Source: Malacoraja senta
Taxonomy: Eukaryota
Assembly: GCA_038087875.1 (NCBI GenBank)
Contig: CM075978.1
Location: 160,580,001-160,644,000 of the forward strand
Direction: 5' to 3'
Length of the DNA stretch: 64,000 nucleotides
The notes below the pieces were generated by a model, which saw nothing but the letters and a program-made list of their open reading frames with translations, was not told where the DNA came from and made no database searches. Of this stretch, positions 945-58,725 are shown in pieces; the first letter of the stretch is position 1, and every line of letters starts with the position of its first letter. The translations under genes and the position numbers were made by a program.

Positions 945-1060
945 AAAAGCAAAGAGACACAAAGTGCTGGAGCAACTCAGTGAGTCAAGCAGCACCTCTT
1001 GAGAACATGGATAGGTGATGTTTCAGGTTGGGACCCTTCATTAGAATGGGACCCTTCATC
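945..1060 (-). mobile_element. Penelope-terminus mini-element with probable TSD
   Basis: Single arm (gctggagcaactcag...ggtgatgtttcaggttgggacccttc) flanked by agattttag(t/a)gat at 932-944 and 1061-1073. Confidence 0.6.
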
Positions 1061-4688: not shown

Positions 4689-5159
4689 TCAGAATCTTGT
4701 GCTGTCCTTCGCCTTGTCTTCAAGAATGACGTTGCGGAGATCCTTGCTCCTGAAATCACGATGGCTCTTATCGTACAGTTCACGGTGGGCCTGATACCAT
4801 TCCACCAGGTCTCTCTCTTGTTCCCTGGAAAAATGATAATGCCTTGTGCCCAACCTGTTCTTCGCCGGCGCAGATGGGGCATCAGTCTCCTGAGCCAAAT
4901 CCGAGTCCCATGCAGGGACATAAGCTGGAGCAGGAGATGGGGCAGCAGATGGGGCAGCAGATGAGGCAGGAACTGGGGTGGGAACTGGTGAAGGTGCTAA
5001 GGCAGAAGATAGGGCAGGAGATGGGACAGGTACTGAAGCAGGGGCAGGAACAACAGCACGGACAGAAGCAGTGGCTGGAGCCTCCAGTAGTTTAATGTTC
5101 TCTATAATTACTTTTTTTACTTTTGCCTGCATCGTTTTTTTCATCCTAGTTCTCCTCAT
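4689..5159 (-). pseudogene. MADF/Myb-SANT DNA-binding protein, N-terminal part (Harbinger accessory protein)
   Basis: accATG at 5159, Pro/Ala-rich linker, then FSREQERDLVEWYQAHRELYDKSHRDFRSKDLRNVILEDKAK (MADF-like LYDKxHxD motif); truncated within the domain. Confidence 0.7.
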
Positions 5160-5231
5160 GGTCCTGATATTATGTTTATGTCTCAAGATCTCACGTGGTT
5201 TTAATGTGACCCGGTAAAAGGCGGGCTGATT

Positions 5232-7042: not shown

Positions 7043-7789
7043 AAAAGGCGGGCTGATTGACAACGGACGTCGAGCGGCGTCGGGTGATGACGTCATCGCG
7101 CAACGCAACGCGCTAGGCCAACTCCGTCGAGACGGTGGGCGGCGTCGAGGCGGTGCGCGCGGCGTCGAGGCAGCAGCGGGGCGGCAGGCCGTTGCCGCAC
7201 GAGATTTTTGGACAGTGTCACTTTTTCAGAGCTCCGCGCTGTGTCTGGAACAACTCCATACGGCACCGGCGATCTACGTGGGACCGACCCCGCGACCAAC
7301 GCGCGGTCCTCGGGCGGCCCCCGCTTCCTGTTAGGTCGCGCTTGCCGCATGAAATCGCCCGCCCATGGGACAGCTTGCCGCATGAAATCGCCCGCCCGTG
7401 GGACATTCTTCTAAACACCATTGGATGCAAGGCTAGCCTGTTGAAACTTTCCACAGAGAGCAACTCACTTATTCTTGGTATTAGCTGAGGAAACCTCCTC
7501 TGAAATGTTTCCAACTCATTAATACTCTTCCATAAATATGGACATCAAAAATATATGGATGTGATCTCACCAAATGCTCCAGATAAATGAAGCATAATCT
7601 CTGTAATTATATATTTGATTTGCCATTTTGTTACTTTTCCTGATTACATGTGAATCCCCCTATCAGCCTTTTGCAAGTCTTGCACAAGGACACCCAAATC
7701 ACTCTAATGTAGAGTGATTTGGGTGTCCTTTGTGCAAAATCTCTAATGAGATTTGTGATCTCTCATCATTGAGAAAATAAGGTTTTTTG

Positions 7790-7923
7790 TTCCTCAGTCT
7801 GAAGAAGGGTCTCGACCCAAAACGTCACCCATTCCTTCTATCCAGAGATGCTGCTTGCCCTGTTGTGTTACATCAGCATATTGTGTCTATTTTCAGTGTA
7901 AACCAGCATCTGCAAATCCTTCC
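7790..7923 (+). mobile_element. Penelope-terminus mini-element (hammerhead core with G12>A)
   Basis: gtctgaagaagggtctcgacccaaaacgtcacc...ccagcatctgca; flanked by taag(g/c)ttttttg at 7778-7789 and 7924-7935. Confidence 0.7.
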
Positions 7924-8029
7924 TAAGCTTTTTTGGTTGTCCACATTGAACAATTTCACATTTTCTAACATTATTATCCTTTTGCCAGCTCATAGCTGGC
8001 ACATTTAACCCACCTCCAGTAAAACTCTG

Positions 8030-8915
8030 AACCATTATCCAATTATTTGGGAAATGCCGGTGGCTCAGCATCTGTGTCAGCAGATGATGTAGGCCACACA
8101 CCCTTCCAACTCCAAGTGACCCCGATTTCTGTGCTCCCCTTCAATTTGCCAGAGCCTCGGTTCTTGTGCTCCATTTCAACACTATGACCCCCTAGTTCCC
8201 ACACTTGAAGGAGACAACCTCCATCATGTGCATCCCTGGTAACAATAAGATTCTTTGGTCTGTTTGGATGCGGCTCTGGGAGTTGGAAGGGATAGTGGAT
8301 GAGGATTGGGAGAGGTGTTATGAAAATCACCTCTTCTTATCTCTTCCCTTCCCACAATTCAACAACTCCAACAGTCCTTTCACGTGCAACAGTAATTCAC
8401 TTAAACCTCCTTCAATTCACAGTACAAAATTCAATGTTCTTGATTTCGTCATCCGTAAAGTGGACAACACTGGACACAGATTGGGGATCACTTTGTGAGG
8501 AACTTGTATTCAGCCAAAGCTCAGCAGATTTTAAACTTCATGGGAGCTCACATACATACACCTTCGATATATACCTGATTTGACGTCTGAAATTGTTTCT
8601 GTGTGAAACAGACATTAAGCTACATTTGGTGCTTTTTTGGGGGAATTCAACTACACTGTCCCAGAAGGGTGTGTAGTTGAGCACTTCAGGGATATTATAA
8701 CATAGGACAAGGGCCCCATCAAGTACCAGAATTGACTTTTATCCTTCAGCACCACTCCAATCCTCGAGTTTGCTAAGGCCCCGACAACCATTCCACTTAC
8801 TCCCACTGATGATTGGACATTCACTTCTCTAAATTTATCTCAGAAAATCTGAGTGAGAGTCACATGCTGGCTTTTTAATCCACGATGCCCATGCTGGTAA
8901 TCAAGACCTGCTCTA
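8030..8915. mobile_element. Old Penelope-like fragments in mixed orientation
   Basis: Degenerate GIY-YIG-region similarity to the 32050 element on the plus strand, with RT-like remnants on the minus strand. Confidence 0.4.
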
Positions 8916-8919
8916 TGCT

Positions 8920-9770
8920 GCAGAAGGACTTGGGAGAGGTTGGGAGAGTGGGCAGATAAGTGGCAGATGGAATATAGTGCTGCAAAGTGTGGAGTCATGC
9001 ATTTTGGTAGTAGGAATAAAAGTGTAGAATATTTTCTAAATGGGGAGAGAATCCAGAAATCGGGGGTGCAAAGGGACGGGAGTGCTGGTGCAGGATTCCA
9101 GAAAAGTTAATCTGCAAGTCGAATAGGTAGTAAAGAAAACAAATTCAATGCTAGCATTTATTCCAAGAGGGCTTGTATACAAAAACAGGGATGTAATGCC
9201 CTATAAGGCGCTCGTAAGGTCGCATTTGGAATATTGTGAGCAATTTTGGGCACCATATCTGAGGAAGGATGTGCTGGCTCTGGAGAGGGTCCAGAGGAGA
9301 TTTACAAGAATGATCCCAGGAATGAGTAGGTTAACCTATGATCAGGATTTGTCGGCACTGGGCCTGTACTCGCTGGAGTTTAGAAGAATGAGGGGGGACC
9401 TCATTGAAATACAGAATAGTGAAAGGCTCGGATAGAGTGGATGTGGAGAGGATGTTTCCAGTAGTGGGAGAGTCTAGGACTAGAGGTCATAGACTCAGAA
9501 TTAAAGGACGTTCTTTTAGGAAGGAGATGAGAAGACATTTCTTTAGTCAGAGGGTGGTGGAATTCTTTGCCACAGAAGGCTGTAGAGGTCAAGTTAGTGG
9601 ATATTTTTAAGACAGAGATAGATTTGTGATTAGTACAGGTGTCAGAGGTTAAGGGGACAAGGCAGGAGAATGGGGTTAGGAGGGTGAGATAGATCAGCCA
9701 TGATTGAATGGTGGAGTAGACTTTATGGGCCGAATGGCCTAATCATACACCTGTCACTTATAACCTTATG
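8920..9770 (+). mobile_element. CR1 LINE 3' fragment
   Basis: YKALVRSHLEYCEQFWAPYLRKD, ESRTRGHRL and a typical 3' UTR. Confidence 0.9.
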
Positions 9771-9772
9771 AC

Positions 9773-10689
9773 TAGAGCCAGGATGTTTAGGCATTAAAAA
9801 CTGAAATAGGCAGGCAAAAATGCATAATAAAGTGCAAAAAAGGCATGGAAAAAGGCATTTATTGACCAAAAAAGGGCATAAAAAAGCATGTATTTCCACC
9901 ACCAAATTATGGTTAAAATGATAATATAAAGGTATACTACATTAAATGACCAAAGTTGCCAGGTTGTACATAATTACTAGCATTTTTTTCAAATTATCTG
10001 GTGTTAAACTATGCCGTCTGTCAGACAGAATATGCTTCAGTTGTGAAAAAACTCTTTCTACCTCAGCTGAGGTCACTGGTGCATACCCGAAACAAGCTAC
10101 AGACTCTATATTCATGTCGATATCTTGTGCATTACAACTACCTTTGAGAACTTTAGCTATGTTTTGTATTTCTTCAAGATCGTTGTTAGCTAAAATCACT
10201 CTCTCACATTTTCCTTGTATGTCTTTACCTACATCGCCAGGAACTTTACGAATATCGTCAGTTACTTTGTTGAAAACCTGCAAGTTATTCACTAATGTTT
10301 CGCAACGTTTCTCGAGGGAAGTGATAGCTTGAGGGAAATTTGCAAAATGGGAACCAATAAATAGATTTTGGAGGAGACTGAACCAGTGGGCTGCGGCACG
10401 AATGAATGAACGACCGACGGTGACGCCGACGGTTTCGCCCCGGTAGTGGAAATGTTCTTGTAATTTATACTATGTTAACACGTTAATAATAACATTAATA
10501 TTAACGTATTAACATTGAAAACTTCATTGTAATCACGGTACAACTAGAGATAATAGCACGACCTTTTAGCAAAACGGCAAAAAAAGGCTGATTTAGGCAC
10601 TCGATAGTGAAAAAGGCATATTATCTTGGTGAAATCATAAAAAAAGGCATGAAAAGGCTCTCATGGCATTTATGGCAAAATCCTGACTA
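9773..10689 (-). mobile_element. Non-autonomous hAT-superfamily element (internal deletion)
   Basis: ORF 9942-10292 ends YAPVTSAEVERVFSQLKHILSDRRHSLTPDNLKKML (hAT dimerization domain); imperfect TIRs tagagccaggat / atcctgacta; near-TSD cttatgac / cttatact. Confidence 0.8.
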
Positions 10690-10913
10690 CTTATACTAAT
10701 CCCATTTTTTGGTACTCTAAAGCGTTCTTGGCATTGGGGAATGTTTCTCACTACTTACCCCATTCCTCAGCCATCTCTACATCATGGAAAACAAACCCAA
10801 CCTATCCTGTATCCCATCATAGCTGCATTTTCCAGTGCAATTACATTGTTTTTATAGTGTTCTATTTAACTGCACACCGTACGCCAGCTGTGGCCTTATC
10901 AAGGTTTTATATA

Positions 10914-11101
10914 AGGTAGACAAAATTGCTGGAGAAACTCAGCGGGTACGGCAGCATCTATGGAGCGAAGGAAATAGGCAACGTTTCGGGCCGAAACCCT
11001 TCTTCAGACTCCTTCGCTCCATAGATGCTGCCTTACCCGCTGAGTTTCTCCAGCAATTTTGTCTACCGTCGATTTTCCAGCATCTGCAGTTCCTTCTTGA
11101 A
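10914..11101. mobile_element. Fold-back Penelope-terminus mini-element with a hammerhead core
   Basis: Inverted arms; minus-strand CTGAAGAAGGGTTTCGGCCCGAAACGTT; exact TSD caaggttttatata at 10900-10913 and 11102-11115. Confidence 0.85.
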
Positions 11102-11169
11102 CAAGGTTTTATATAGTTGCCTTATAATCTCGCCGCTCTTATTTTCTATGACTTAGCTAATGAACTTCC

Positions 11170-11432
11170 ATCACCCCGGCAAGCGGGCCTGAACATCGGG
11201 CCGCACATAGCGGCGACAGCGGGGGGTTCGGGAGCCCCCCGACCACGGGAGGACAACAGAGGATGATGACTGAATTTTGGAGCCTTCCCTCAACTTTGAT
11301 CCTGCTGTGTGGGGATGTCTGTGTTAAGACTATCAGGTTATGTGCTCTTTATTATTCGTATGGCTGTATGGCGACCACACATTTCATCGTATCAATTGGT
11401 ACATGTGACAAATAAATGTATCTTCTATCTTG
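11170..11432 (+). mobile_element. GC-rich retroposon with a Rex1-type 3' tail
   Basis: Ends atttcatcgtatcaattggtacatgtgacaaataaa plus a tatct repeat; related to 26781-26965. Confidence 0.55.
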
Positions 11433-11462
11433 AAAGTAAATATCAGATATCCTTTCTTAACT

Positions 11463-11635
11463 GTGTAAGAAGGAACTGAAGATGCTGGTTTAAACCGAAG
11501 ATAGACATAAAAAGCTGGAGTAACGCAGTGGGACAGGCAGCATCTCTGAAGAAGGGTCTCGACCCGAAACGTCACCCATTCCATCTCTCCAGAGATGCTG
11601 CCTGTCCCACTGAGTTACTCCAGCTTTTTGTGTCC
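11463..11635. mobile_element. Fold-back Penelope-terminus mini-element with an intact hammerhead core
   Basis: ctgaagaagggtctcgacccgaaacgtca at 11546-11574; exact TSD atcctttcttaact at 11449-11462 and 11636-11649. Confidence 0.85.
11546..11574 (+). ncRNA. Minimal hammerhead ribozyme core (Penelope-type)
   Basis: CUGAaGA, extra A, stem II GGGU/ACCC, GAAA, palindromic ACGU stem III, GUC triplet; stem I is weak. Confidence 0.6.
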
Positions 11636-12416
11636 ATCCTTTCTTAACTACCTCATCTACCTGTGCTACTGCATTAAGGGATCAGGGATCTTTGGATACA
11701 TGCACCAAAATGTCTCTGTTCTTCAGTCCTACCATTCATTATGTATATCCTAGCCTTATTCATCCTTCCAAAATGTATCACCTCATTCTTTTTCCAAGAT
11801 CTACAAATGTCATTGCTATTGCTATTGCCATCTGTATGGGCAATGGTGTGGCCACGTACAATGCTAACCTGAGTGGTGGGCCTCCACCACTTTCTTAGGC
11901 AATCTGTTCCAGATTGTAACCACCTCCAGGTAAAAAAAAATCTTCCTGCATTGTCCTCGAAACTTCTTATTCCTCACCTTTTACCTATAACTTCTGGTCT
12001 TGGACACCTTTGCTATGGGGAAAAAAAATTGCTTTCTACCCCATCTATACCGTTCAAAGTTTTATGTTCCTCTCTCAGGTTCCCATTCAGCCTTGTGTGC
12101 TCCAAAGAAAGGCTGATTAGAGCGGGTATCAAGGGTTATGTGGAGAAGGCAGGAAAATGGGATTCGGAGGCAGAGATCAGCCATGATTGAATGGCGGGGT
12201 AGACTCGATGGGCCGAATGGCCTAATTCTACTCCTATAACTTGTGAACTTGTGAAACATACTCTTCTCATCTAGTCTCTCCTTATTATTGAAACATTCCT
12301 GTTAACATCGTGAAGACAGAACATGAATCGCCTCTAGACTTTCTGCAATCATGATCTTCCTATCATGCGGTGACCAAAATGTACACAACGTTCCAGCTGT
12401 GATCTAACCAATGTTA

Positions 12417-14214: not shown

Positions 14215-14809
14215 TTATATAAAGTTGGACCAAAATCTCCCAGCTCTTATATTCTATGCTCCAATTACTCAAGGCAAGCAACCTGTTTTCATCCTTCACT
14301 TCCTATCTATCTTTGTTGCCACCTTCAGGGTGTTTTGGTTTTGTAATTCAAGGTCTCATTATTCATCCAATACGCTCTAGGGCCTCACCATTCTTATATG
14401 TCCTCAAATTATACTCCTCAGATGTATCAACTCACCTCATTATTATTGGATACAAAGAGACAAACCCTTCCATCACGTTTTATGCTCACACTAGTTTTAG
14501 CAAGAGGGTCAAGAGTCAAGAGATTTTATTGTCATGTGTCCCAGATAAGACAATGAAATTCTTGCTTGCTGCAGCACAACAGACTGCTAGGCAAGTCTCA
14601 CCTCCCTACCATCATGGGCTAATTGTACAAGTCTAGTGGATTAATGTGCTCATAAGTGTCCCTATTAAGCCATTTTAACCTCCGCCTATTTACACATGCC
14701 TCTCCCTAGGGACTATATTGAATACTTTTGTAACTTTGTCAGCGCCTCTTGTATACTTGTACTCTATGCAAACAAAGAATCTCACTGTACCAAGGTACCA
14801 CTGCACCAA

Positions 14810-15625
14810 TGAAGGTGTTCAGTGAAATGATCGACCAGTCTACGCTTGGTCTCGTCGATGTATAAGAGTCCACATCTTGAATAACGGATACAGTAGATGA
14901 GGCTGGAGGTGCAAGTGAACCTCCGCCTAACCTGAAAGGACTGTTGGGGTACCTGGACAGTTGAGGGAGGAGGTATAGGGACAGGTGTTGCATCTCATGA
15001 GACCAAACGTAGACTGGGCTCTTATACTGTATATCGGCACTACCAAACGTGGACTGGGCAATCGCTTCGCTGAACAACATCGCTTAGTCCGCCTGGACCT
15101 ACCTGATCTCCTAGTTGCTAAACACTTTGATTCCCCTTCTCATTCCCACACTGACCTTTCTGTCCTAGGCCTCCTCCATTGTCAGAGTGAGACTAAACGC
15201 AAATTGGAGGAATAGCATCTCATGTTTCGCTTGGGCAGCTTACAACCCAGGGGTATGAAAATTGATTTCTCTAACTTCAAATAACCACCGCATTCCCCCT
15301 TTCTCCATGCCTCCCCCTCCCTAGTCATGCCAGCTTTTCGTTCTCACCTAGCAAACAGCTAACAATAGCTTGTTTCCTTTATCATTATTACTTTCTTTGT
15401 GTATCTTCCATTCATTAGTTCTATATCTCTCTACATCATTGTCTACATCCCTCGTTTCCCTTTCCCATAACTTTCAGTCTGTATGAGGGTCTCGACACAA
15501 AACGTCACCAGGAAATTTGTCTCCAAGAAAACTTGACTCCAGAAATGCTGCCTGTCCCGCTGAGTTACACCAGCATTTTGTGTCTATCTTCGGTTTAAAC
15601 TAGCATCTGCAGTTCCTTCCTACAC
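14810..15625 (+). mobile_element. Penelope-like element 3' fragment with an inverted 5' segment
   Basis: LYIGTTKRGLGNRFAEQ...VAKHFDSPSHSH (GIY-YIG); 14810-14997 is a similar region on the minus strand; ends in a degenerate hammerhead and terminal repeat. Confidence 0.85.
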
Positions 15626-15936
15626 CATATATCTGTCCAATTGCCTTAAACTTACTGACATTGTTCCTATACCTGGGTGACCACAAATGCTCACCTTTTA
15701 CCAATGACTTGTACAGCTGCTTCATGATGTCCCAATTATGGTACTGGATATCCTTCCCAATGAAGGCACGCACGCCAAATGTTTTCTTCACCATATTGTT
15801 CACCCAATAGTTTAAAATCGTATATATTTCTATTGTATTTTAATGATCAAAGTGTCATTTGACAATTAATGAGCTTATTATATAGTGATCTAATAATATT
15901 AAAATAGATTTCCACTGCTGAGAACAGAACTCTTAC

Positions 15937-17240: not shown

Positions 17241-17464
17241 TGAAGTAATTCAGCCTGGCTCATTTCCCTGGATCATTGGACTTCCCACCTTTTTTGTCAT
17301 TCTTTATTCTAGTCATCAGTAGGAACTCTATTATCACATCAATGTCTCTCAAGTCATGGATCCACATATTGCCTCTCAATGCAGGATATAATAAACCACA
17401 ATTATATATCTTATTTCTTCTGGCTGTACTGAAAATGCCTCCAAACCATTCAGCCATTTTAATT

Positions 17465-17627
17465 GTGTAGGAAGAAACTGCGGGTGCTGGTTTACATCAA
17501 AGATGCTGGAGTAGCTCAGTGGGTTGGGCAGCATTTCTGGAGAAAAGGAATAGAAGTCTCGAAATTATACCTTTTCTCCAAAGATGGTGCCTGACCTGCT
17601 GAGATGCTCCAGCATTTTGTGTCTATC
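17465..17627. mobile_element. Fold-back Penelope-terminus mini-element (core deleted)
   Basis: Inverted arms; TSD ttcagccatt(t/a)taatt at 17449-17464 and 17628-17643. Confidence 0.75.
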
Positions 17628-17906
17628 TTCAGCCATTATAATTATGGTGTCAGATAATCCAACCCACTGTCAAGCTTGGCATTCCAATATACCCAATTCT
17701 CCTCAATGAAGTTCTGGTTTCCATTACTAGTGTTAGTTTAAATTAGCAGTGCCTTGCTGCTCCAATGGAGTTCCCAAGGATCCGACAGGTAAGGATGAAC
17801 ATCCACAGATTTCCCAGATCTTCAAATGGAAAATCTGCCAAAAAAACAATGGGGCGACGTTAATATAAAAGAGAGACTAGCTCCCTGGACCAATGCAATT
17901 ACTGTA

Positions 17907-31704: not shown

Positions 31705-32655
31705 TTGGGGGGAGGGGGAGCAAGAGCGGAACTGCGGGATATCGAGGAGACCCTTGTGAGGGCCTCGTAACTCCCCCTAGTCCTAACCTTCCACCCCATC
31801 AGCCGTCGTATACAGCGCATAATCCTCTGACATTTTTGCCACCTCCAACGGGATCCCACCACTAGCCACATCTTCCCATCTCCACCGCTTTCCGCAGAGA
31901 CCGTTCCCTCCATAACTCCCTGGCCAACCCATCCCTACCCACCCAAACCACCCCCACCCCAGGTACTTTCCCCTGCAACCGCAGGAGATGCAACACCTGT
32001 ACCTATACTTCCCCCCTCGACTCCATCCAAGGACCCTGACAGTCTTTTCAGGTGAGGCTGAGGTTCACTTGCACCTCCTCCAACCTCATCTACTGTATCC
32101 GCTGTTCCAGGTGTGAACTCTTGTATATTGGCGAGACCAAGCGCAGGCTCGGCGTATGTTTCACTGAATACCTCCGTTCAGTCCGCCTAAACATACCTGA
32201 ACTCCCGGTTGCTACACACTTTAACTCCCCCTCCCATTCCCACACTGACCTTTCTGTTGAAGGAACAGTACCTCATATTTCGCTTGGGCATCTTGCACCC
32301 CAGCGGTATGAACATTGACTTCTCTAACTTCAAGTAACCCTTGCTTTCTCTCTCCATCCCTCCCCCTTCCCAGTTCTCAGACCAGTCTCACTGCCTCCGA
32401 CTATATTTTATCTCTGCTTTGTTGTTACTTTCTCCCAGCTAACAATGATCCATTCTACATTTTCCTTGCTCTCCATTCCATTTGCCCTGTTTTCACACCT
32501 TCACGCTTCCTTATCTACCTCCCTCCCCCCTGACGTCAGTCTGAAGAAGGGTCTCAAACCGAAACATTGCCCATTCCTTCTCTCCCATTGAGTTACTCCA
32601 GCATTTTGTGTCTATCTTTGGTTTAAACCAGCACCTGCAGTTCCTTCATACACAT
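31705..32655 (+). mobile_element. Penelope-like element 3' part with a short inverted 5' piece
   Basis: FTCTSSNLIYCIRCSRCELLYIGETKRRLG (GIY-YIG); ends with gtctgaagaagggtctcaaaccgaaacattg and the terminal repeat. Confidence 0.9.
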
Positions 32656-39349: not shown

Positions 39350-39699
39350 TATTTTGGCACTGAACAAGATTAAATCTGGAATTGGTGCTGGAGCCATCTG
39401 AAGTAAGGCTGGAAGTGGGAGCCAGGGGGTGGAGGTGAGATCTCCATTGGGAGATTTAATTGTGTGGGAACTGACTTGAAGCCCATATCCAAATGTCTTT
39501 AAACTTTGTAATTATATCTAGCTCCACCACCTCTTCCCAGATATCCCCCATCAAAGAGATAAAGATTTAAGGTTTCAGGCCATCTGAGCTACGAACAATA
39601 GATTAGAAAGCTAGTTTTAAGTTGCTGAGAAGGCGGCGGGAAGAATGTGGAAGACAAAGGGATATCTGTGAGAGAGTAAGGCCAGGGTTGCCATGTGGA

Positions 39700-39792
39700 A
39701 GATAGACACAAAAACCTGGAGTAACTCAGCGGGACAGGCAGCATCTCCGGAGAAGGAATGGGTGACGTTTTGGGTCGAGACCCTTCTTGAGA
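39700..39792 (-). mobile_element. Penelope-terminus mini-element with a 9-bp TSD
   Basis: TSD ccatgtgga at 39691-39699 and 39793-39801; degenerate hammerhead. Confidence 0.7.
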
Positions 39793-41029
39793 CCATGTGG
39801 ATGAATTGTTTTATGCTTAAATGGGTTAATGGGGTCTGTTAAAAGTTGACATGGACAAAGAAGCATAATGCTAATATGGACATTTCCAGCTGGTCAAGCT
39901 GTAATAATGGAGACAGAAATACTGAGCCATTTTCACAGATGGATGATTTATAGTAGAGATAGCCTGTTCTTATGTAAACAGAGAAGTTACCTCCAGTTGG
40001 ATAATTCATTGAGTCTAAAAGGTTGCAACATGCCTAAATGGAAAATGAAGTGTCTTCCTCAAGATACTATTGGACCTTGTTACAACTGGAGCCCATGGAC
40101 AGAAAAGTTGAAATGGTAGAGGGATGGAGAATTAAGTGACAGGTAACATGAATTTCAGGATAGATCCTGCTGGCTAAATGAAGGAACTTTGCAAATAAAT
40201 CACCAAACGTATTGATTTCACCAGCAGCAGAGTCCACATGGTGAACACCAAGACAGTCTGGATGAAGTGCAAGTGAATTGTTGCTTCACCTGGAAAAAAT
40301 TGGCTTCCTATATCCTGAATATCCTATCAGCAGCAAAATTATACATATGAAAACAAAACCAATAATGGTATTTGTCATAGAACACAGAACAGTACAGCAC
40401 AGGAATGGGCCCTTTGGCCCACAATGTTTGTGCCGAACATTATACTATTGGACCTTGTTAAACTGATCTCAGCTGCCTGTACATGATCCATATCCCTCTA
40501 TTCCCTGCACTTCCATGAGCTGATCTTAAACACCATTATTGTATCTGCACCCACCCCCACCCTGGGCAATGCATTCCAGATCACCACCACTCTCTGTATA
40601 ACAAAAACTTGCCCCGCGCATTTCCATTGAACTTTCCCCCTCTCACCTTATAGCTATGCTCTCATCTGTTGGACATTTCCACTCTGGGAGAAAGGTTCTG
40701 ACTGTATACCCTATCTATGCCTCCCCGAATGTTATATTCTTCCATAAAGTCTCCCCTCAACCTCCCACTTTTCTGAGAAAACAATCCAAGTCTATCTAAC
40801 GTCCCTGAAGCTGAAACCCTTTCATCCAGGCAGCATTCTGATAAACCTTCTCTGCACCCTCTCCAAAACTTTCTTGTAATGGGGTGACCAGAACTGCACT
40901 AACATTCCAAATGCAGCCTAATCAAAGTCCTATAGAGCTGCATCATGACTTCCTGACTCATACATTCTTACAATGCCCTGGCAAAGAAGGCAAGGATAAC
41001 ATATGCCTTCTTTACCACTCGATCTACTT

Positions 41030-51243: not shown

Positions 51244-53853
51244 ACATCTTTGACAGTCAGCAATTAAGGGGGCAGAGCTTTTCTATATATATTCATTCAA
51301 GGGAAGTGGCTTTGCAGGTTGAGCCAGCATTTAATTGCCCTTATGGAGGCAGTGGTGGGCTGCCTTCATAAACTGCTACAGTCCATGCATGAGTGTACCC
51401 ACAATGCCGTTATAAAGAGAGTTCCACAGTTTTGACCCCGCAACAATAAAGGGATGGTGATATATTTGCAATTCAGGATGTTGTGTGGTTTGAAGGACAA
51501 CTTCCAGATTGTGGTGTTTCCACGCTTTGCCTCTGTCGTTATGACCGGTGGAGGTCGTGGATTTGGAAGTCTAGTGAGTTGATGCAGTGCATGCTGTAGA
51601 TGATACAAACTGCTGCAATGGTGCATCGGTGGTAGAATGGATAAATGGTCGTGGATGGAGTGCCTCATCCTACATGTTGTTGACTATCTCGTGTTTCGTT
51701 GAAAGTACATTAATGCAGGCAAGTGGAGAGTATACCATCACACTTGGAAATGTGTAGGAAGGAACGGTAGATGCTGGTTTAAACTGAAGATAGACACACA
51801 ATGCTGGAGTAACTCAGCGGGACAGGCAGCATCTCTGGAGAGAAGGAATGGATGATGTTTCAGGTTGAGACCCTCCTTCAGACTGAGAGCCAGGGGAAAA
51901 CTAGAGATATGGAGATATGTACCCTTCTATATCTTTATGTCTCCCTCTCCCCTGACTCTGTCTGAAGAAGGGACTCGACCCAAAATGTCACCTATTCCTT
52001 CTCTCCAGAGATGCTGCCTGTCCTGCTGAGTTACTCCAGCATTTCATGTCTACCATCACACTTGGACTTGGATTTGATAGACTGTGGACTGGCTTTGGAG
52101 AGTTAGGAGGCAAGTTACATGCTGCAGTATTCCTAACCTCTGACCTTTCTTTTGAAGCCACATTATGTACATGGTTACTCCAGTAGCTTCTGCTCAAAGG
52201 TAAAACCCCAGGGATAGTAGGGAATTCAGTAATGGTGATGTCATTGAATGTTAGGCAGTGAGAGCTGGATTTTGTCTTGTTTTCTCTTTCTTCACTGAGT
52301 GTCAAAAGTTGCTATGGGAATGTTTGAGTCTTTGTTGTGAAACTTTAGCATGCTTTGGAGCATTACATGTAAATCTGAATGGATGGCCAGTGCAATTTAT
52401 GACTATGAATGGTAATTCTATATCAGTGAAATTTAGAAATCATTTTAATTCCACTTTCCATTAAAATATGAGACGGTCTTTCTTCCTATATAAAACAGAA
52501 ATAGTTACAAACTATTATATTCCTATTTGTGGATAATCATCTCTTGCTACATCTTTGACAGTCAGCAATTAAGGGGGCAGAGCTTTTCTATATATATTCA
52601 TTCAAGGGAAGTGGCTTTGCAGGTTGAGCCAGCATTTAATTGCCCTTATGGAGGCAGTGGTGGGCTGCCTTCATGAACTACTACAGTCCATGCATGAGTG
52701 TACCCACAATGCCGTTATAAAGAGAGTTCCACAGTTTTGACCCAGCAACAATAAAGGGATGGTGATATATTTGCAATTCAGGATGTTGTGTGGTTTGAAG
52801 GACAACTTCCAGATGGTGGTGTTTCCACGCTTTGCCTCTGTCGTTACGACCGGTGGAGGTCGTGGATTTGGAAGTCTAGTGAGTTGATGCAGTGCATGCT
52901 GTAGATGATACAAACTGCTGCAATGGTGCATCGGTGGTAGAATGGATAAATGGTCGTGGATGGAGTGCCTCATCCTACATGTTGTTGACTATCTCGTGTT
53001 TCGTTGAAAGTACATTAATGCAGGCAAGTGGAGAGTATACCATCACACTTGGAAATGTGTAGGAAGAAACGGTAGATGCTGGTTTAAACTGAAGATAGAC
53101 ACACAATGCTGGAGTAACTCAGTGGGACAGGCAGCATCTCTGGAGAGAAGGAATGGATGATGTTTCAGGTTGAGACCCTCCTTCAGACTGAGAGCCAGGG
53201 GAAAACTAGAGATATGGAGATATGTACCCTTCTATATCTTTATGTCTCCCTCTCCCCTGACTCTGTCTGAAGAAGGGACTCGACCCAAAACATCACCTAT
53301 TCCTTCTCTCCAGAGATGCTGCCTGTCCTGCTGAGTTACTCCAGCATTTCATGTCTACCATCACACTTGGACTTGGATTTGATAGACTGTGGACTGGCTT
53401 TGGAGAGTTAGGAGGCAAGTTACATGCTGCAGTATTCCTAACCTCTGACCTTTCTTTTGAAGCCACATTATGTACATGGTTACTCCAGTAGCTTCTGCTC
53501 AAAGGTAAAACCCCAGGGATAGTAGGGAATTCAGTAATGGTGATGTCATTGAATGTTAGGCAGTGAGAGCTGGATTTTGTCGTGTTTTCTCTTTCTTCAC
53601 TGAGTGTCAAAAGTTGCTATGGGAATGTTTGAGTCTTTGTTGTGAAACTTTAGCATGCTTTGGAGCATTACATGTAAATCTGAATGGATGGCCAGTGCAA
53701 TTTATGACTATGAATGGTAATTCTATATCAGTGAAATTTAGAAATCATTTTAATTCCACTTTCCATTAAAATATGAGACGGTCTTTCTTCCTATATAAAA
53801 CAGAAATAGTTACAAACTTTTATATTCCTATTTGTGGATAATCATCTCTTGCT
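51244..53853 (+). repeat. Tandem duplication, 2 x 1305 bp
   Basis: Units 51244-52548 and 52549-53853; duplicated ORFs offset by 1305; about 11 substitutions counted by eye. Confidence 0.97.
51749..52050. mobile_element. Two-core fold-back Penelope mini-element (second copy at 53054-53355)
   Basis: Long inverted arms with a hammerhead-like core on each strand; TSD taccatcacacttgga at 51733-51748 and 52051-52066; inserted in an L2. Confidence 0.85.
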
Positions 53854-54107
53854 ACAGCAAGTAATGAATAATAACTTTAATTGTGAAGAAATAATCCAAT
53901 TAGTGCAACTACCACTGTAAATGACATGGTTTCCATAATATTTTATAACCAGTCATTCTAATAGAGGCCAAGCCTAACCTATATATTCAATTCAATGAAG
54001 CTTTTCAGTTGCATCATTTTCTAAACCTGTGCCATGACCCGATTGAACGACTACAAAATATACCATGCACAACAGGTCAACCAAACTGAAGGAACAAATT
54101 TTGTAAG

Positions 54108-54424
54108 ACACCAAAGAGAGGCAGAAAATGCTGGAGTAACTTAGCAGAACAAGCAGCATCTCTGGAGAGAAGGAATAGGTGATGTTTCGGGTCGAGACCC
54201 TTCTTCAGACTGTCAGGGGCGAGAGAGACATAGAGATATAGAAAGGTACATACAGTATCTCCATATCTCCTGTTGCCCTTTGCCCTGCCTCGCAGTCTGA
54301 AGAAGGGTCTCTACTCAGAACATCACCCATTCCTTTTCTCCAGAGATGCTGTCTGTCCCGCTGAGTTACTCCAGTATTTTGTGTCCATCTTCGGAGTAAA
54401 CCAGCTTCTGCAGTTCTTCTCCAA
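54108..54424. mobile_element. Two-core fold-back Penelope mini-element
   Basis: Inverted arms; minus-strand core CTGAAGAAGGGTCTCGACCCGAAACATC; possible TSD aaat(t/a)ttgtaag. Confidence 0.8.
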
Positions 54425-55204
54425 AAATATTGTAAGGAAGTTGTGTTTTAGACCCTATGTAAGAAATAGAAGAATCACTGCAGATCAAAGGCAACCGAGT
54501 GAAATCCTTTGAGATCTTTCAATCTGAAGCAAAATAATTCAATCATCACAAGTGTGCATATTGGTAAACTAACCACCATGAAATAGGAAAATCAATACTT
54601 TGGAAATTATGAAGAAATAAATCTTGTTTCTCTCGACTCAGCATCTATTGGATAGACAATTCAAAGCATGCTATACACTTTCTTCCTATAAACTGCTTTG
54701 ATATCCTTTCAGCATTTGTTGTATTATTTTCATGCATACACTCATCTCATCTCCCTCCATGAGGATCTAAATATGATTTGGACTAACCTCATAAACGGAA
54801 GGTGATTGACCTGCTAGTTATTTGCATTTTTACCCCTGAAGTGTTCCCACCCCTCCACATCTGTCAAAAATGTCAAAATGCAAAAAAATGTGGATTCCTT
54901 GAAAGCTTTGTTCCACAAAGAAATGTGCTCCAGTCATAACGGCAGAAAATGTTTTCACTGTTCGACTAAAGTTAAGAAAAGTTGCATCCCTTACCCCACG
55001 CTTGCTAATCTGTTAAAGGAATACATTCTCCAATTTGACAACAGTTAACACCTGGCATGAGATCAAAGAGGTGATTACAAGAGTAATATTTACGTTCTAT
55101 CCAGCAAAGTAGTAAACTGATACATACTGAAAACAGTCAGTTTAGTCTTATCGTTTGTCCAATTAAATCCATTATGCACTTCTGTGTAGGTTGGAGCAAA
55201 GGAA

Positions 55205-55480: not shown

Positions 55481-58400
55481 AATGAATGAATGAATGAATG
55501 AATGAATGAATGAATAAGTTTATTGGCCAAGTATTCACATGCAAGGAATTTGCCTTGGTGCTCTGCCCGCAAGTGACAATGACATAGAGTGACAGTTAGG
55601 AATGACACATAAAACATTAAACATTAATAATAAAACATTATTGATTAAACACGTGAATTAAGTAAAATACCAGATCAAAGGGAGGCTACAGATTTTTGGT
55701 TATTGAGTAGAGCTACTACTCGTGGAAAAAAAGCTGTTTTTATGTCTGGCTGTGGCAGATTTGACAGTCCGGAGTCGCCTTCCAGAGGGAAGTGATTCAA
55801 AAAGTTTGTGACCAGGGTGAGAGGTGTCAGAGCTGATCTTACCCGCTCGCTTCCTGACCCTTGCAGTGCACAGTTCATCAATGGAGGGAAGGTTGCAACC
55901 AATAACCTTCTCAGATGATCAGACGATTCGCTGCAGCCGCCGGATGTCGTGCTTGGTGGCTGAGCCAAGCCAGACCATGAAGGAGAAGGTGAGGACAGAC
56001 TCTACGAGGGCCTTATAGAATTGGACCATCAGTGCCTGTGGCAGATTGTGCTTCCTCAGCTGTCGCAGGAAGTACATCCTCTGTTGTGCCTTTTTGACTG
56101 TGGGATCGATGGTAGGTCCTTGGAGATGATGGTTCCCAGGAACTTCCAGTTCCCAGATGTGACTATGGTGTTGTTGATGGTGAGTGGGGTGAGGGGAGGG
56201 GGAGCTCTCCTAAAGTCTACTATCAATTCCAGTCTTAAGAGCATTGAGCTCTAGGTTGTTGCTACGGCACCAGGACGCCAGCTGTGTCACTTCCTGTCTG
56301 TAGGCAGATTCCTCCCCATCCTGGATCAGTCCAATCAGGGTTGTGTCATTCGCAAACTTGAGAAGCTTGACAGAGGAGTCAGTGGAGATGCAGTCATTGG
56401 TATAGAGAAAGTAGAGGAGAGGGGAGAGTACGCAGCTCCTATGCTGAATGTTTGCGGGTCCGAGATGTGCTTTCCCGCCTCACATGCTGCTTCCTGTCTG
56501 TCAGTAAGCTGGTGATCCACCAACGGAGGGGTTCAGGCACAGTCAACTCGGAAAGTTTGGAGTGTAGTAGCTCTGGCATAATGGTGTTGAATGCAGAGCT
56601 AAAATCAACAAACAAAATCCATGCATAGGTCCCCTGGCGGTCTAGGTGCTGGAGGATGAAGCGCAGGCCCAGGTTGACTGCTTCATCCACAGATCTATTG
56701 GCCCGATATGCAAATTGCAGAGTGTCCAGCAGGGGGTTTGTGATATTTTTCAGCTTGGCCAGCACAAGCCTTTCAAGGGTCTTCATGACTACAGAGGTCA
56801 GTGCGATAGGCCTGTAGTCATTAAGACCAGTAATCCTTGCCTTTTTGGGTACAGGGACAATAATGGAGACTTTGAAGCAGGCAGGGACAGTACAGGTTTG
56901 CAAGGACTGGTTGAAAATGTCTGTGTAGACCGGTGCCAGTTGTTCGGAGCTCGGGGGTAGAGGGGGAAACATTGTCCGGTCCTGGAGATTTCCGGCTTTT
57001 CTGTCTTCTGAACAGCCTCTCCACCTCCTCTATTTTTAGTTGATGATGGAGAAATGATGTTTTGCAGCACAGAGGGGATGGGTAACTGGGTGTGAAGTGG
57101 TGATTGGAGAGAGGTGGGTGGGAAAGGGTCCAGTCTTTTCAGACTGGAATCTTGCTTTAAGTAGGTGTGAAGTGGTGAATGGGGAGAAGTGGGTGTAGAA
57201 GGGTCCAGTCTTTGCAGACTGGGGTCTGGCTGTGTTGGTTGGGGAGTGGGTACCAGGGTTACGTTTCGGCTTGTCAAACCTGCAGTAGAACTCATTCAGT
57301 TCGTTGGTCAGCTGACGATTGTCCAAAGAGCGGGGGGCTTTCCTCTTGTAGCTGGTGATTCTTGCAAGCCCTTCCAAACTGAAGAAGAGTCACTAGCTGA
57401 GAAATTGCTCTTCAACTTCTCAGAGTACCTTTCCTTGGCAGCTCTGATTCCTCTTCTCAGCTTCTACTTTGCCTGCCTGCAGAGGTCTGCATCCCCGCTC
57501 CTGTAGGCCTCCTCTTTAGACTGTTGGAGCTGCAACAATGACAAGCCCTGCAGTAAACCAGGGCTTGTCGTTGTTGAACCAGGTCCGGGTCCTAGTTGCA
57601 ATGCAACTGTCATCACAAAAGCTGACATATGATGATACAGTGTCCGTATACTCATCGAGGCTTGTGGTTGCTTCCCTGAACACATTCTAATCCGTGCAGT
57701 CAAAGCAGGATTGTAGGTTCTCAATGCCCTCGATTGTCCACCTTTTTGTTTTTCTGACTACAGGCTTAGCAGATTTTAGTTTCTGCCTGTAGGTCGGAAT
57801 AAGGTGAACTAGACAATGATCAGAGAGACCCAGACCTGCCCGGTGAACAGAGCGATATGCGTTCTTGATTGACATGTAACAGTGGTCAAGTGTTCTCTCC
57901 CCTCTGGTGGGGCAGGTAAACTGAAGTCTATACTTTGGAAGGTCACGGCTGAGGTTAGCTTTGTTAAAGTCCCCCAAAACAATGACCGTGGAGTCCGGGA
58001 AGTCACTCTCTACCCTCATTACCTGGTTAGCGAGTTGCGTTTGCGCCTCACGTACGCAGGGATGGGGGGGCGGAGGTATGTAAACTCCAACGAGAATAAA
58101 GGAGTTAAATTCCCTCGGAGAGTAGAAGGGTTTGCCGTTTATAAAGAGGGATTCTAGGTTGGGAGAGCAGAGGTTTGACAGTACCGTGATGTCGCTGCAC
58201 CAGTCCTGGTTGGTATAGAAGCATATTCCATCACCTCTTGATTTCCCCGCTGCCTCCACTGTCTGCTCTGTGAAGTTGGAAGCCAGCCAGTTGCAGCGCG
58301 CTGTCCGGGGTCGACTCACAAAGCCAGGTCTCGGCCTTGTCTGGCGCAGGAGTTGCAGTTCGTCCACTTTGTTATTGAGAGAACGTACGTTTGCCAGGAA

Positions 58401-58725
58401 TATGCTCGGGAGTGGTGTCGTCGCCGGAGTCGGGTGAGTGTTCCAGAGCGCTTCCCACGGGTCCTCCTCTGTCTCAAGACCTTGAACGCAGCCACAGCCC
58501 CGCCGATGAGTATGTCCAAATAATCCAGCGAGTGAGAGAAATCCGGTATGATGTTTGGTGGTACCGTATGTCCGATGTTTATGAGTACCTCTCTCATGAA
58601 AGTAATCTTTGTAGAGTTTTCACAGACGACACAAACGAACAAACACATACAAAACAGCAAGGAGCAGTACACCGTGGCAGCCATCGTCGGCGCCAGCAGC
58701 AGCAAGCAGCAGCTACACGGCAAGC
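55481..58725 (-). mobile_element. Near full-length Rex1/Babar LINE (APE + RT), frameshifted
   Basis: 5' MAATVYCSLLF..., RRTRGKRSG, GKSRGDGIC, LGDFNKANL, TLDHCY, SDH, NDYRPIALTSVVMKTLERLV, DFSSAFNT; (ATTC)n tail at 55481-55515. Confidence 0.92.

What the first reader, a model, noticed from the sequence alone, without database searches (positions are those of the whole stretch)
10900..11649. Family of fold-back, hammerhead-bearing mini-retroposons with their own target-site duplications
Seen: about 15 copies in 64 kb of a short non-coding unit that matches the 3' terminus of the Penelope fragments here (551, 945, 7790, 10914, 11463, 15476, 17465, 22395, 24890, 32538, 39700, 51749, 53054, 54108, 55205). 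Many are asymmetric palindromes, with one full arm ending ccagcatctgcagttcc and one arm cut near gtcta. At least seven have TSDs: caaggttttatata, atcctttcttaact, ttcagccatt(t/a)taatt, taccatcacacttgga, ccatgtgga, taag(g/c)ttttttg and agattttag(t/a)gat. Known: Penelope-like elements carry minimal hammerheads in their terminal repeats and often form inverted termini. Inference: these are non-autonomous ribozyme RNAs of about 90-320 nt mobilised by the Penelope RT/GIY-YIG protein, a retrozyme-like system that repeat annotators would probably call MITEs or SINEs. I cannot tell whether it has already been described.
Basis: partly seen in the sequence, partly recalled or inferred. Interest (0 to 1): 0.8.

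Follow-up and report, generated by a model that had tools for sequence, protein, structure and literature searches.

The report
Penelope retrotransposon tail mini-insertions, often fold-back
The short hammerhead-bearing palindromes are real insertions with target-site duplications, but they are the already described way Penelope-like retrotransposons insert (extreme 5' truncation, an inverted partner copy, a 30-40 bp 'tail' on one end), here amplified to an unusually high copy number, not a new retrozyme-like system.

Summary
All 15 listed copies exist and all seven target-site duplications (TSDs) are confirmed. TSDs of 11 or more matches flank 35 of 113 units against 0 of 384 shuffled flank pairs.

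The unit is the 3' end of a Penelope-like element (PLE). In the window a GIY-YIG endonuclease reading frame is followed by a 3' UTR with a textbook PLE minimal hammerhead, then two alternative ends about 40 nt apart.

Fold-backs are nearly always one tailed arm plus one tail-less arm, both 3' ends outward. This matches the published PLE architecture and the two internal reverse-transcription start sites with extension of both target strands.

Fold-backs are rebuilt at each insertion from a one-sense template and are not copied as palindromes. Arm variants are mirrored within copies, partner arms are each other's nearest relatives, and the same junction types recur on many haplotypes. No tandem arrays or discrete strand-specific RNA were seen, so the retrozyme reading is not supported.

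The 5' ends do cluster tightly at the hammerhead's 5' edge. A self-propagating, SINE-like short unit therefore stays possible (about 0.25).

Two hammerhead variants alone give about 40,000 exact copies genome-wide. Other first readers noted the same family in other windows of this genome.

The parts
10900..10913 (.). Left TSD of fold-back A (caaggttttatata)
   Evidence: Identical 14-mer at 11102-11115
10914..11010 (-). Fold-back A, tail-less arm (reference R180-277). It ends at the gtcta start site next to the left TSD and carries the complete hammerhead core.
   Evidence: BLAST to reference L030:1357-1674; sequence
10980..11007 (-). Minimal hammerhead core of copy A: CUGAAGA-A-helix II (GGGUUUCGGCCC)-GAAACGUU, with predicted cleavage after GUU
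   Evidence: Read. The same 27-mer occurs 19,354 times in the genome. It lies at the apex of a -122.6 kcal/mol hairpin.
11010..11101 (+). Fold-back A, tailed arm (R217-314). It starts a few nt after the hammerhead cleavage site, and the roughly 35-nt tail occupies 11068-11101.
11102..11115 (.). Right TSD of fold-back A
11449..11462 (.). Left TSD of fold-back B (atcctttcttaact)
   Evidence: Identical 14-mer at 11636-11649
11463..11545 (-). Fold-back B, tailed arm (R223-313)
11546..11573 (+). Minimal hammerhead core of copy B: CUGAAGA-A-GGGUCUCGACCC-GAAACGUC
   Evidence: The same 27-mer occurs 20,906 times in the genome.
11545..11635 (+). Fold-back B, tail-less arm (R182-275), ending at the gtcta site
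11636..11649 (.). Right TSD of fold-back B
7793..7925 (+). Single-arm copy with tail (R177-309), TSD taag(g/c)ttttttg
39698..39793 (-). Single-arm copy without tail (R181-278), TSD ccatgtgga
955..1051 (-). Single-arm copy without tail, TSD agattttag(t/a)gat
17462..17630 (.). Fold-back (tailed minus-strand arm plus tail-less plus-strand arm), TSD ttcagccatt(t/a)taatt
51751..52057 (.). 301-bp fold-back. Both arms reach about 40 nt upstream of the hammerhead and meet at a GTAC palindrome. TSD taccatcacacttgga. It is duplicated with its flanks at 53056-53362.
54088..54433 (.). Older fold-back of the same junction class
31866..32337 (+). C-terminal part of the parent PLE ORF. It holds a CX4CX2C linker motif, the GIY-YIG endonuclease (..NLIYCIRCSRCELLYIGETKRRLG..) and the ORF end ..GMNIDFSNFK*. 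The frame is broken.
   Evidence: Pfam GIY-YIG E=0.057; nearest Atlas clusters are eukaryotic GIY-YIG, 0.95; 69,613 first-look candidates in the genome
32338..32654 (+). 3' UTR of that PLE copy, with the hammerhead core at 32541-32567 and the tail ending at 32654. This is the long form of the short unit.
14808..15629 (.). Longer example of the same architecture: an inverted endonuclease-region fragment (14808-14999, minus strand) lies head-to-head with a PLE 3' part (15028-15629, plus strand) that ends in the tail

Best explanation
These are mini-insertions of the 3'-terminal region of a Penelope-like retrotransposon (PLE), made by the PLE reverse transcriptase and GIY-YIG endonuclease through target-primed reverse transcription.

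Shown:
- The unit is the last 95-135 nt of the PLE 3' UTR. A minimal type-I hammerhead sits at its 5' edge and a stem-loop region lies downstream.
- Copies end at one of two fixed points about 40 nt apart, which I read as two reverse-transcription start sites.
- About two thirds of insertions are single arms. About a quarter are head-to-head inverted pairs with both 3' ends outward, usually one end from each start site.
- The two arms of a pair come from the same one-sense template at each insertion.

Inferred:
- Both strands of the staggered target cut (TSD roughly 9-17 bp) prime cDNA on two template RNAs, as shown in vitro for an Anolis PLE.
- The two nascent minus-strand cDNAs then pair at short palindromes in the template and copy each other. 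The candidates are GTAC about 40 nt upstream of the hammerhead, CAG-N-CTG at its 5' edge, and UUUCGG-C-CCGAAA in helix II. This would give the recurrent junction classes.
- The sharp 5' limit at ..tcAGTCUGAAGA (an initiator-like TCAGTC) is the 5' end of PLE transcripts that start in the terminal repeat. Reverse transcription starting at the start sites nearest the 5' end would then yield very short copies as by-products of autonomous elements.

Most genomic hammerheads are dead, mainly through CpG decay.
For: Parent element:
- An endonuclease ORF is followed in the same sense by hammerhead and tail at window 31866-32654 and in L033.
- 661 genomic places join the ORF-end motif to a hammerhead core 215-245 nt downstream.

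Hammerhead:
- All sequence criteria of Cervera and de la Pena 2014 (PMC4209133) are met.

Two ends:
- The 3' ends are bimodal.
- Among two-arm units, 18 have both 3' ends outward and 0 have them inward (p = 8e-6).
- 13 of 16 fold-backs pair one tailed with one tail-less end (p = 0.009).
- This matches the two adjacent internal start sites, the 30-40 bp tail and the extension of both strands in PMC11167929, and the 'inverted 5'-truncated copy' and 'tail at one end' in PMC8557442.

Fold-backs made anew each time:
- 30 independent A-type fold-backs each have their own flanks and TSDs.
- At least 7 haplotypes at 5 variable sites are mirrored in both arms.
- Arm distance is 1.73/56 within a copy and 3.55/56 between copies, with no clustering by side (3.55 against 3.59).
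- The partner arm is the nearest arm in 12 of 30 copies against 2.4 expected (maximum 8 in 2000 permutations).
- The palindromic centre occurs at 820 loci, while the window's own arm haplotype occurs only 140 times.
- The central base is G or C about equally, as expected from repair of a G:G mismatch.

5' limit:
- 45% of unbiased arms start at R170-189.
- More than 90% of 100 sampled A-type cores end within R177-181.

TSDs: 35 of 113 units against 0 of 384 controls.
Against: - The template RNA and its 5' end were not observed. In one stranded polyA RNA-seq run, reads holding the unit lie equally on both strands, 95% run on into unrelated sequence, and no start or end pile-ups appear. Neither a transcription start at the hammerhead edge nor hammerhead cleavage is shown.
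- No intact autonomous copy of this family was found. The best open frames among 150 scored endonuclease matches are 404 aa or less.
- A-type cores are linked to the ORF-end motif about 100 times less often than other cores at the 215-245 nt spacing (5 of 661). That spacing is probably wrong for the A-type, because L033 shows 121 nt.
- The palindrome-annealing step is inference from junction positions only.
- The unbiased sample is small (about 195 kb, 108 arms), and part of it lies next to targeted copies.
Confidence: 0.62

Rival explanations
1. A SINE-like, non-autonomous lineage. The roughly 135-nt unit runs from the hammerhead at its 5' end to the PLE recognition stem-loop and tail at its 3' end. 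It would be transcribed from its own dispersed copies, for example from an internal initiator-type promoter, and mobilised in trans by PLE protein. Fold-backs would be insertion by-products.
For: - The 5' end is discrete but ragged, at R177-181, in more than 90% of 100 sampled A-type cores. Only about 4-6% continue into a common C-rich upstream sequence.
- 45% of all unbiased arms start at R170-189.
- The A-type is as abundant as the B-type (19,354 against 20,906 exact cores), yet only 5 of 661 ORF-linked cores are A-type at the tested spacing.
- Many mirrored haplotypes imply many source variants.
- No intact autonomous partner was seen.
- Non-autonomous PLE derivatives are known in other taxa (PMC8557442; bioRxiv 10.64898/2026.07.22.740005).
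Against: - The ORF-linkage test used a spacing that does not fit the A-like family. L033 has 121 nt and the C-rich upstream sequence.
- A transcription start in the terminal repeat of an autonomous PLE gives the same 5' limit.
- No strand-biased or discrete RNA was seen in the one RNA run examined.
- There is no pol III head (no tRNA-like sequence).
- Promoter activity of the unit is untested.
Confidence: 0.25
2. The fold-back palindrome is itself the replicating unit: a hairpin RNA or MITE-like element that is copied whole.
For: - At least 40 full-length copies of the 186-bp fold-back at 88-95% identity lie at other loci.
- 820 loci have an identical 27-nt palindromic centre.
- One arm asymmetry recurs in 6 of 30 copies, always in the same direction.
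Against: - Arm variants are mirrored (at least 7 haplotypes), which a palindromic master cannot generate.
- Arms do not cluster by side.
- Partner arms are nearest relatives.
- Both centre types occur on the same and on several haplotypes.
- The centre count (820) exceeds the window haplotype's arm count (140).
- The recurrent asymmetry sits on three different haplotypes, so it was not inherited from one master.
- Both outer ends coincide with the two start sites.
- TSDs vary in length, unlike those of cut-and-paste MITEs.
Confidence: 0.04
3. A non-LTR retrozyme: tandem hammerhead units are transcribed, self-cleaved and circularised, with the circular RNA as the template.
For: A type-I hammerhead of PLE origin is present, and retrozymes were reported in one cartilaginous fish.
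Against: - The window has no tandem arrays of the unit.
- Adjacent arms are overwhelmingly head-to-head rather than head-to-tail (70 against 15 within 80 bp).
- Single dispersed units have one cleavage site and cannot release a unit-length RNA.
- No back-joined reads appear among the joints listed.
Confidence: 0.03

Closest known systems
[quoted passage not shown] 2021, PMC8557442; Frangieh et al. 2024, PMC11167929)
   Same: A GIY-YIG endonuclease ORF lies upstream. 5' truncation is strong. An inverted 5'-truncated copy is joined head-to-head. A 30-40 bp tail is present at only one end. There are two alternative 3' ends about 40 nt apart, downstream of the hammerhead, and TSDs are present.
   Different: Here the truncation is extreme (95-300 bp in total), so the whole insertion is a small asymmetric palindrome. 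Junctions fall into a few recurrent classes at short palindromes. 5' ends pile up at the hammerhead's 5' edge. Copy number is very high. The hammerhead lies in the 3' UTR after the ORF stop, whereas in the Anolis element the ORF starts inside the hammerhead.
Minimal hammerheads of metazoan PLEs (Cervera and de la Pena 2014, PMC4209133; Lunse et al. 2017, cited from memory)
   Same: The CUGANGA and GAAA boxes are present. [quoted passage not shown] There is no helix III, and positions 15.1-16.1 form the palindrome ACGU, which implies dimeric action. Helix I is very short in the native context. The paper also notes mostly single genomic motifs taken as truncated PLEs, and pairs on opposite strands 100-700 bp apart.
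   Different: The paper calls about 4,000 (coelacanth) and 9,000 (Xenopus) motifs remarkable. Here two exact 27-mers alone give about 40,000. Cleavage activity is untested here.
Animal non-LTR retrozymes (Cervera and de la Pena 2020, PMC7229834; Li et al. 2026, bioRxiv 10.64898/2026.07.22.740005)
   Same: Short, non-coding, hammerhead-bearing sequences related to PLE terminal repeats.
   Different: Retrozymes are defined by head-to-tail tandem units that release circular RNA. These units are dispersed singles or inverted pairs with TSDs, and no tandem arrays or circular junctions were seen.
L1 twin priming (inversion with 5' truncation); from general knowledge
   Same: The second target strand also primes reverse transcription and gives an inverted segment within one TSD-flanked insertion.
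   Different: L1 twin priming inverts part of one RNA without duplicating it. Here both arms copy the same region, so two templates (or two passes) are used, and both initiate at defined internal sites.

Membership tests
PLE minimal hammerhead (min-HHR) | Catalytic boxes CUGANGA and GAAA with a cleavable UH | tested here: met
   CUGAAGA...GAAACGUC (B-type) and ...GAAACGUU (A-type). Core positions are 88-96% conserved over 112 cores, and losses concentrate at CpGs.
PLE minimal hammerhead (min-HHR) | [quoted passage not shown] | tested here: met
   The extra A is present in 93% of cores and G10.1 in 95%. C11.1 is 78%, decaying to T as a CpG.
PLE minimal hammerhead (min-HHR) | No helix III; palindromic positions 15.2-16.2 that allow a dimer | tested here: met
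   A15.1-C-G-U16.1 reads ACGU, which is self-complementary.
PLE minimal hammerhead (min-HHR) | Located in the terminal repeat or UTR of an element that encodes PLE RT and GIY-YIG | tested here: met
   The endonuclease ORF is followed in the same sense by the hammerhead at window 31866-32654 and in L033, and there are 661 linked cases genome-wide. The RT domain itself was not examined.
PLE minimal hammerhead (min-HHR) | Self-cleavage | not testable with these tools
   The polyA RNA-seq run shows no read ends at the site, which is not decisive. Rfam models do not score it.
PLE insertion architecture | High 5' truncation with a constant 3' region | tested here: met
   5' ends range from R1 to R240, and about 5% reach beyond R1 into the ORF region.
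PLE insertion architecture | A 30-40 bp tail present at one end only; two adjacent start sites | tested here: met
   3' ends fall at R271-282 or R302-318. Fold-back ends: one of each 13, both tailed 2, both tail-less 1.
PLE insertion architecture | An adjacent inverted 5'-truncated copy, head-to-head | tested here: met
   18 of 65 unbiased units are inverted pairs with 3' ends outward and none have them inward. A longer example lies at 14808-15629.
Non-LTR retrozyme | Head-to-tail tandem repeats, each with a hammerhead | tested here: not met
   Tandem Repeats Finder finds no array of the unit in the window. Neighbouring arms are head-to-head 70 times against 15 same-strand cases within 80 bp, and those 15 are irregular.
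Non-LTR retrozyme | Circular RNA of unit length | tested here: inconclusive
   Only one polyA run could be laid and no supporting joints were listed. PolyA selection would lose such RNA.
SINE (pol III type) | Head derived from tRNA, 7SL or 5S with an internal pol III promoter | tested here: not met
   No tRNA-like sequence in the window, and Rfam gives no 7SL or 5S match. The unit starts with the hammerhead.
MITE (DNA-transposon derivative) | Symmetric terminal inverted repeats and a TSD of fixed length | tested here: not met
   The arms are asymmetric (tailed against tail-less) and TSDs vary from about 9 to 17 bp or more. One-arm copies with TSDs are the majority (43 of 65).

The most novel reading that the evidence does not exclude
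The roughly 135-nt unit is a self-propagating, SINE-like parasite of the Penelope machinery. Its RNA would begin exactly at an initiator-like TCAGTC at the 5' edge of a minimal hammerhead and end at the PLE recognition stem-loop and tail. It would have produced several hundred thousand dispersed copies (a few per cent of a 1.9-Gb vertebrate genome), each insertion optionally doubled into a hairpin. That would make it a dispersed, non-tandem counterpart of animal retrozymes, and possibly the largest hammerhead family in any vertebrate.
Probability: 0.25. Interest if true: 0.6.

Novelty: new member of a known kind. Interest (0 to 1): 0.35.

Why it matters
It assigns one of the most abundant short repeats of this genome to a known class. 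By extrapolation from about 0.2-0.55 arms per kb, there are several hundred thousand insertions. Repeat annotators would probably label them MITE, SINE or unknown.

It also gives an in-genome footprint, in a vertebrate distant from Anolis, of two results so far shown mainly in vitro: PLE reverse transcription starts at two internal sites one tail apart, and both target strands are extended. The footprint adds two observations. The two ends of one insertion usually use different start sites, and the head-to-head junctions fall at short palindromes in the template.

The perfect 60-75 bp hairpins that result are scattered through transcripts in both orientations. They are obvious candidate substrates for double-stranded-RNA pathways and a known hazard for assembly.

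Tried and rejected
1. Rfam found no hammerhead family at gathering score or at E<=10 on 10800-11750. Only generic miRNA-like hairpin hits appeared, all far below their thresholds. The minimal PLE hammerheads are evidently outside the Rfam models.

2. I first read the hammerhead as antisense to the tail, from fold-back A alone. Single-arm copies (7793, 15442, 32373) show it is sense.

3. The apparent fixed 5' end at query position 165 was an artefact of using a fold-back as the query. The copies continue upstream.

4. The intact 759-aa GIY-YIG ORFs in tandem arrays were tested as the parent. They contain neither the A-type nor the B-type unit and belong to another family.

5. The fold-back as a replicating master was rejected.

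6. The retrozyme or tandem-array reading is not supported.

7. Hammerhead cleavage as the origin of 5' ends: there is only a broad shoulder at R200-223 in the unbiased sample. Tailed arms of A1-type fold-backs start 2-9 nt after the site, not at it. This is suggestive and is not claimed.

8. The ORF-linkage test for A-type cores (5 of 661) was mis-specified in its spacing, as L033 later showed. It cannot count against an autonomous A-type parent.

9. RNA evidence: one polyA run showed no discrete ends or strand bias. This is uninformative for small non-polyadenylated RNAs.

Empty-site tests in related species could not be done.

11. Literature string searches for the core and tail sequences found nothing.
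Full report
**What is there**

The stretch 10900-11649 holds two small asymmetric palindromes.
- Copy A is 10914-11101, flanked by caaggttttatata at 10900-10913 and 11102-11115.
- Copy B is 11463-11635, flanked by atcctttcttaact at 11449-11462 and 11636-11649.

The tail motif occurs 13 times against 0.15 expected. The copy at 53056-53362 shares flanks and TSD with the one at 51751-52057, so it belongs to a local 1.3-kb duplication and is not a separate insertion.

**Orientation and anatomy**

Single-arm copies (7793-7925, 15442-15629, 32373-32654, all on the plus strand) give the sense of the unit. Its parts, in order:
- the hammerhead core CUGAAGA-A-GGGUCUCGACCC-GAAACGUC;
- about 60 nt;
- the sequence ..GUGUCUA;
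- about 40 nt more, ending ..CCAGCAUCUGCAGUUCCUUCCUACAC (the tail).

I used L030:1357-1674 as a natural reference (R1-R318). C3 of the core is at R183, the predicted cleavage is after R210, gtcta is at R269-273 and the tail ends at R312-313.

The core meets every sequence criterion that Cervera and de la Pena gave for PLE minimal hammerheads (PMC4209133):
- both catalytic boxes;
- the G10.1-C11.1 pair;
- no helix III, with a palindromic ACGU at positions 15.1-16.1.

Rfam does not score it. Over 112 cores in about 215 kb, losses concentrate at the two CpGs (C11.1/G12 and C15.2/G16.2), and only 18 cores are strictly intact. Individual copies therefore decay neutrally.

**Parent element**

- Upstream of the copy at 32373-32654, in the same sense, lies a broken reading frame. 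It has a CX4CX2C motif, then ..NLIYCIRCSRCELLYIGETKRRLG.., HFNSPSHS and ..GMNIDFSNFK*, which is a GIY-YIG endonuclease C-terminus. Pfam GIY-YIG scores E=0.057. The nearest Atlas clusters are eukaryotic GIY-YIG fragments at 0.95.
- This domain gives 69,613 first-look candidates in the 1.94-Gb genome. The 150 scored are 71-84% identical, with open frames of 404 aa or less.
- The ORF-end motif followed 215-245 nt later by a hammerhead core occurs 661 times (control 0).
- L033 shows a second subfamily. Its endonuclease frame is intact over about 150 aa, only 121 nt lie between ORF end and hammerhead, and the upstream sequence is C-rich (..ccggacatcAGTCTGAAG).
- A separate family of intact 759-aa GIY-YIG ORFs in tandem arrays does not contain the unit.

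**Ends, orientation and TSDs**

I used a sample that excludes the copies used to fetch loci: about 195 kb, 108 arms and 65 insertion units.
- 3' ends are bimodal, at R265-284 (43 arms) and R300-318 (47 arms).
- Units are single arms (43), head-to-head pairs with 3' ends outward (18), tail-to-tail pairs (0) or complex (4). For 18 against 0, p = 8e-6.
- Among fold-backs, 13 have one tailed and one tail-less end, 2 have two tailed ends and 1 has two tail-less ends. About 49% mixed pairs would be expected from the single-arm frequencies (p = 0.009).
- A flanking repeat of 11 or more matches is found for 35 of 113 units against 0 of 384 mismatched flank pairs.
- TSD lengths vary from roughly 9 to 17 bp.

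This is the published PLE picture. [quoted passage not shown] Frangieh et al. show that a PLE protein cleaves and extends both target strands. They also show that it initiates at two adjacent internal RNA sites separated by the tail, about 90 nt downstream of the hammerhead (PMC11167929).

**Is the fold-back itself copied?**

Searching the genome with copy A gave at least 40 full-length matches at 88-95% identity at other loci. That looked at first like a propagating palindrome. An alignment of 30 of them argues otherwise.

- Each copy has its own flanks and TSD.
- There are two recurrent centre types.
  - A1 has a single asymmetric hammerhead. The tail-less arm runs to A180/G181. The tailed arm begins 2-9 nt after the cleavage site, with small differences between copies.
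  - A2 is a perfect palindrome through helix II and has no CUGAAGA box.
- Both centre types occur on several arm haplotypes and share one haplotype (GTACG).
- At five variable arm sites at least seven haplotypes exist, and each is mirrored in both arms.
- Arms differ by 1.73/56 within a copy and 3.55/56 between copies. Same-side and opposite-side comparisons are equal (3.55 against 3.59).
- The partner arm is the nearest of 59 other arms in 12 of 30 copies, against 2.4 expected (maximum 8 in 2000 permutations).
- Genome-wide, the A2 centre 27-mer occurs at 820 loci, while the arm 27-mer of the window's haplotype occurs only 140 times. The same junction therefore sits on many haplotypes.
- The exact A1 junction of copy A occurs at only 4 loci.

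A palindromic master cannot generate mirrored variants. The arms must be made anew at each insertion from a one-sense template.

**Junction classes (inference)**

Junctions lie at sequences that are palindromic in the template:
- GTAC about 40 nt upstream of the core (the 51751 type);
- CAG-N-CTG at R178-184 (about 8 of 100 sampled A-type cores);
- UUUCGG-C-CCGAAA, spanning helix II and the GAAA box in the A-type (the A2 centre).

Two minus-strand cDNAs primed on opposite target strands have identical sequence. They can pair with each other only at such palindromes, and each can then copy the other. This would explain the reproducible junctions. It would also explain the near-equal G or C at the A2 centre (7 against 8 copies) as repair of a G:G mismatch. 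The step is not demonstrated.

**The 5' limit**

5' ends are not scattered. 45% of unbiased arms start at R170-189, there is a minor cluster at R140-149 and a broad shoulder at R190-240, and about 5% extend beyond R1.

I examined 100 A-type cores listed from the start of contig 1.
- The base before GTC is the expected A in 62, CA in 35 and TCA in 26.
- None has the B-type upstream sequence.
- About 4-6 continue into the C-rich upstream sequence seen in L033.
- The rest run into unrelated, often AT-rich DNA.

The end is therefore ragged but lies within R177-181 in more than 90% of these cores.

The sequence there, tcAGTCT, fits an initiator consensus (from general knowledge). PLE transcription is known to start inside the terminal repeat (PMC8557442). 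My preferred reading is that PLE transcripts start here. Reverse transcription beginning at the start sites 95-135 nt downstream would then give very short copies as by-products.

The alternative is that such short copies are themselves transcribed and form a SINE-like lineage, and I cannot exclude it. A-type and B-type cores are equally numerous (19,354 and 20,906 exact 27-mers), yet only 5 of the 661 ORF-linked cores are A-type. That test used a spacing that L033 shows to be wrong for the A-like family, and no own-genome searches remained to repeat it.

**RNA**

One stranded polyA RNA-seq run from a related sample was laid on 7700-11750 at 88% likeness.
- The library is stranded, because other repeats in the stretch show up to 20:1 bias.
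- Reads on the unit are equal on both strands (for example 305 against 276 on the single-arm copy, and 2235 against 2350 on copy B).
- 95% of reads continue into unrelated sequence.
- No place on the unit shows a pile-up of starts or ends.

This indicates passive transcription of embedded copies. It gives no support for a dedicated small RNA, but polyA selection would miss one. DNA contigs of run X18 match the unique flanks exactly, so X18 is the source species.

**Structure**

The strand of copy A that carries the sense hammerhead folds into a hairpin of about 60 bp (-122.6 kcal/mol, z = -16.5) with helix II at the apex. In such fold-backs the inverted arm supplies a long helix I that the native context lacks. 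In single arms a stem forms between AGAUGCUG (about R229-236) and CAGCAUCU in the tail. It encloses the first start site, which recalls the stem-loop at the Anolis start sites.

**Verdict**

It is wrong in treating the fold-back as a unit and in calling the system retrozyme-like. The architecture is already described, so this is a new, very large member of a known kind. The open question is whether the short unit has become self-propagating (about 0.25). Other first readers noted the same family in other windows of this genome. Those notes are unchecked and were not used as evidence.

Noticed in passing
window 51700-53420: A local tandem duplication of about 1.3 kb carries the 301-bp fold-back together with its TSD and flanks (51751-52057 and 53056-53362, 99% identical).
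   Followed up: partly
L031-L047 (e.g. G000:C14:18.24-18.41 Mb, C5550, C1804, C897): A different and apparently young GIY-YIG element sits in long head-to-tail arrays with periods of about 1.5, 3.7-5.4 and 7.5 kb. Many copies have uninterrupted 759-aa frames. Each unit carries one hammerhead-like motif, CTGACGAAGCTACAGTGATAGCGAAAC. These tandem arrays, not the finding, are where a retrozyme-like or tandem-PLE biology might be sought.
   Followed up: partly
alignment of 30 A-type fold-backs, arm position 33; the window copy is 10914-11101: In 6 of 30 copies, on three different haplotypes and with both centre types, the tail-less arm reads A where the tailed arm reads G (plus-strand terms). The reverse never occurs. 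This is a recurrent, directional difference between the two cDNAs of one insertion, and it is unexplained.
   Followed up: partly
L025:1181-1668: A nested insertion: an A-type fold-back with the 14-bp TSD attctatatttcct lies inside the upstream part of a longer B-type copy. This shows the A-type was active after that B-type insertion.
   Followed up: partly
window 56400-58830 (-), 61247-62302 (+), 63231-63653 (+): LINE fragments unrelated to the finding: RVT_1 (E=2.5e-18) and AP-endonuclease pieces on the minus strand, a coiled-coil ORF1-like 351-aa frame, and a second AP-endonuclease piece (E=6.5e-9).
   Followed up: no
window 9196-9740 and 9876-10555: Two other very abundant repeats. The second shows about 20:1 strand bias in the polyA RNA run, so unlike the Penelope units it is transcribed in one sense.
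   Followed up: no
window 10932-11050 and 11479-11660: Rfam's permissive scan scores the fold-backs as generic microRNA-precursor hairpins (MIR1858 57 bits against a threshold of 137; mir-9186 and MIR1507 36-38 bits against 73). These are chance resemblance to long hairpins, but they flag the copies as possible double-stranded-RNA sources.
   Followed up: no
window 4689-5186 (-): A 165-aa frame has a weak MADF DNA-binding domain match (E=0.002, below the cut-off).
   Followed up: no
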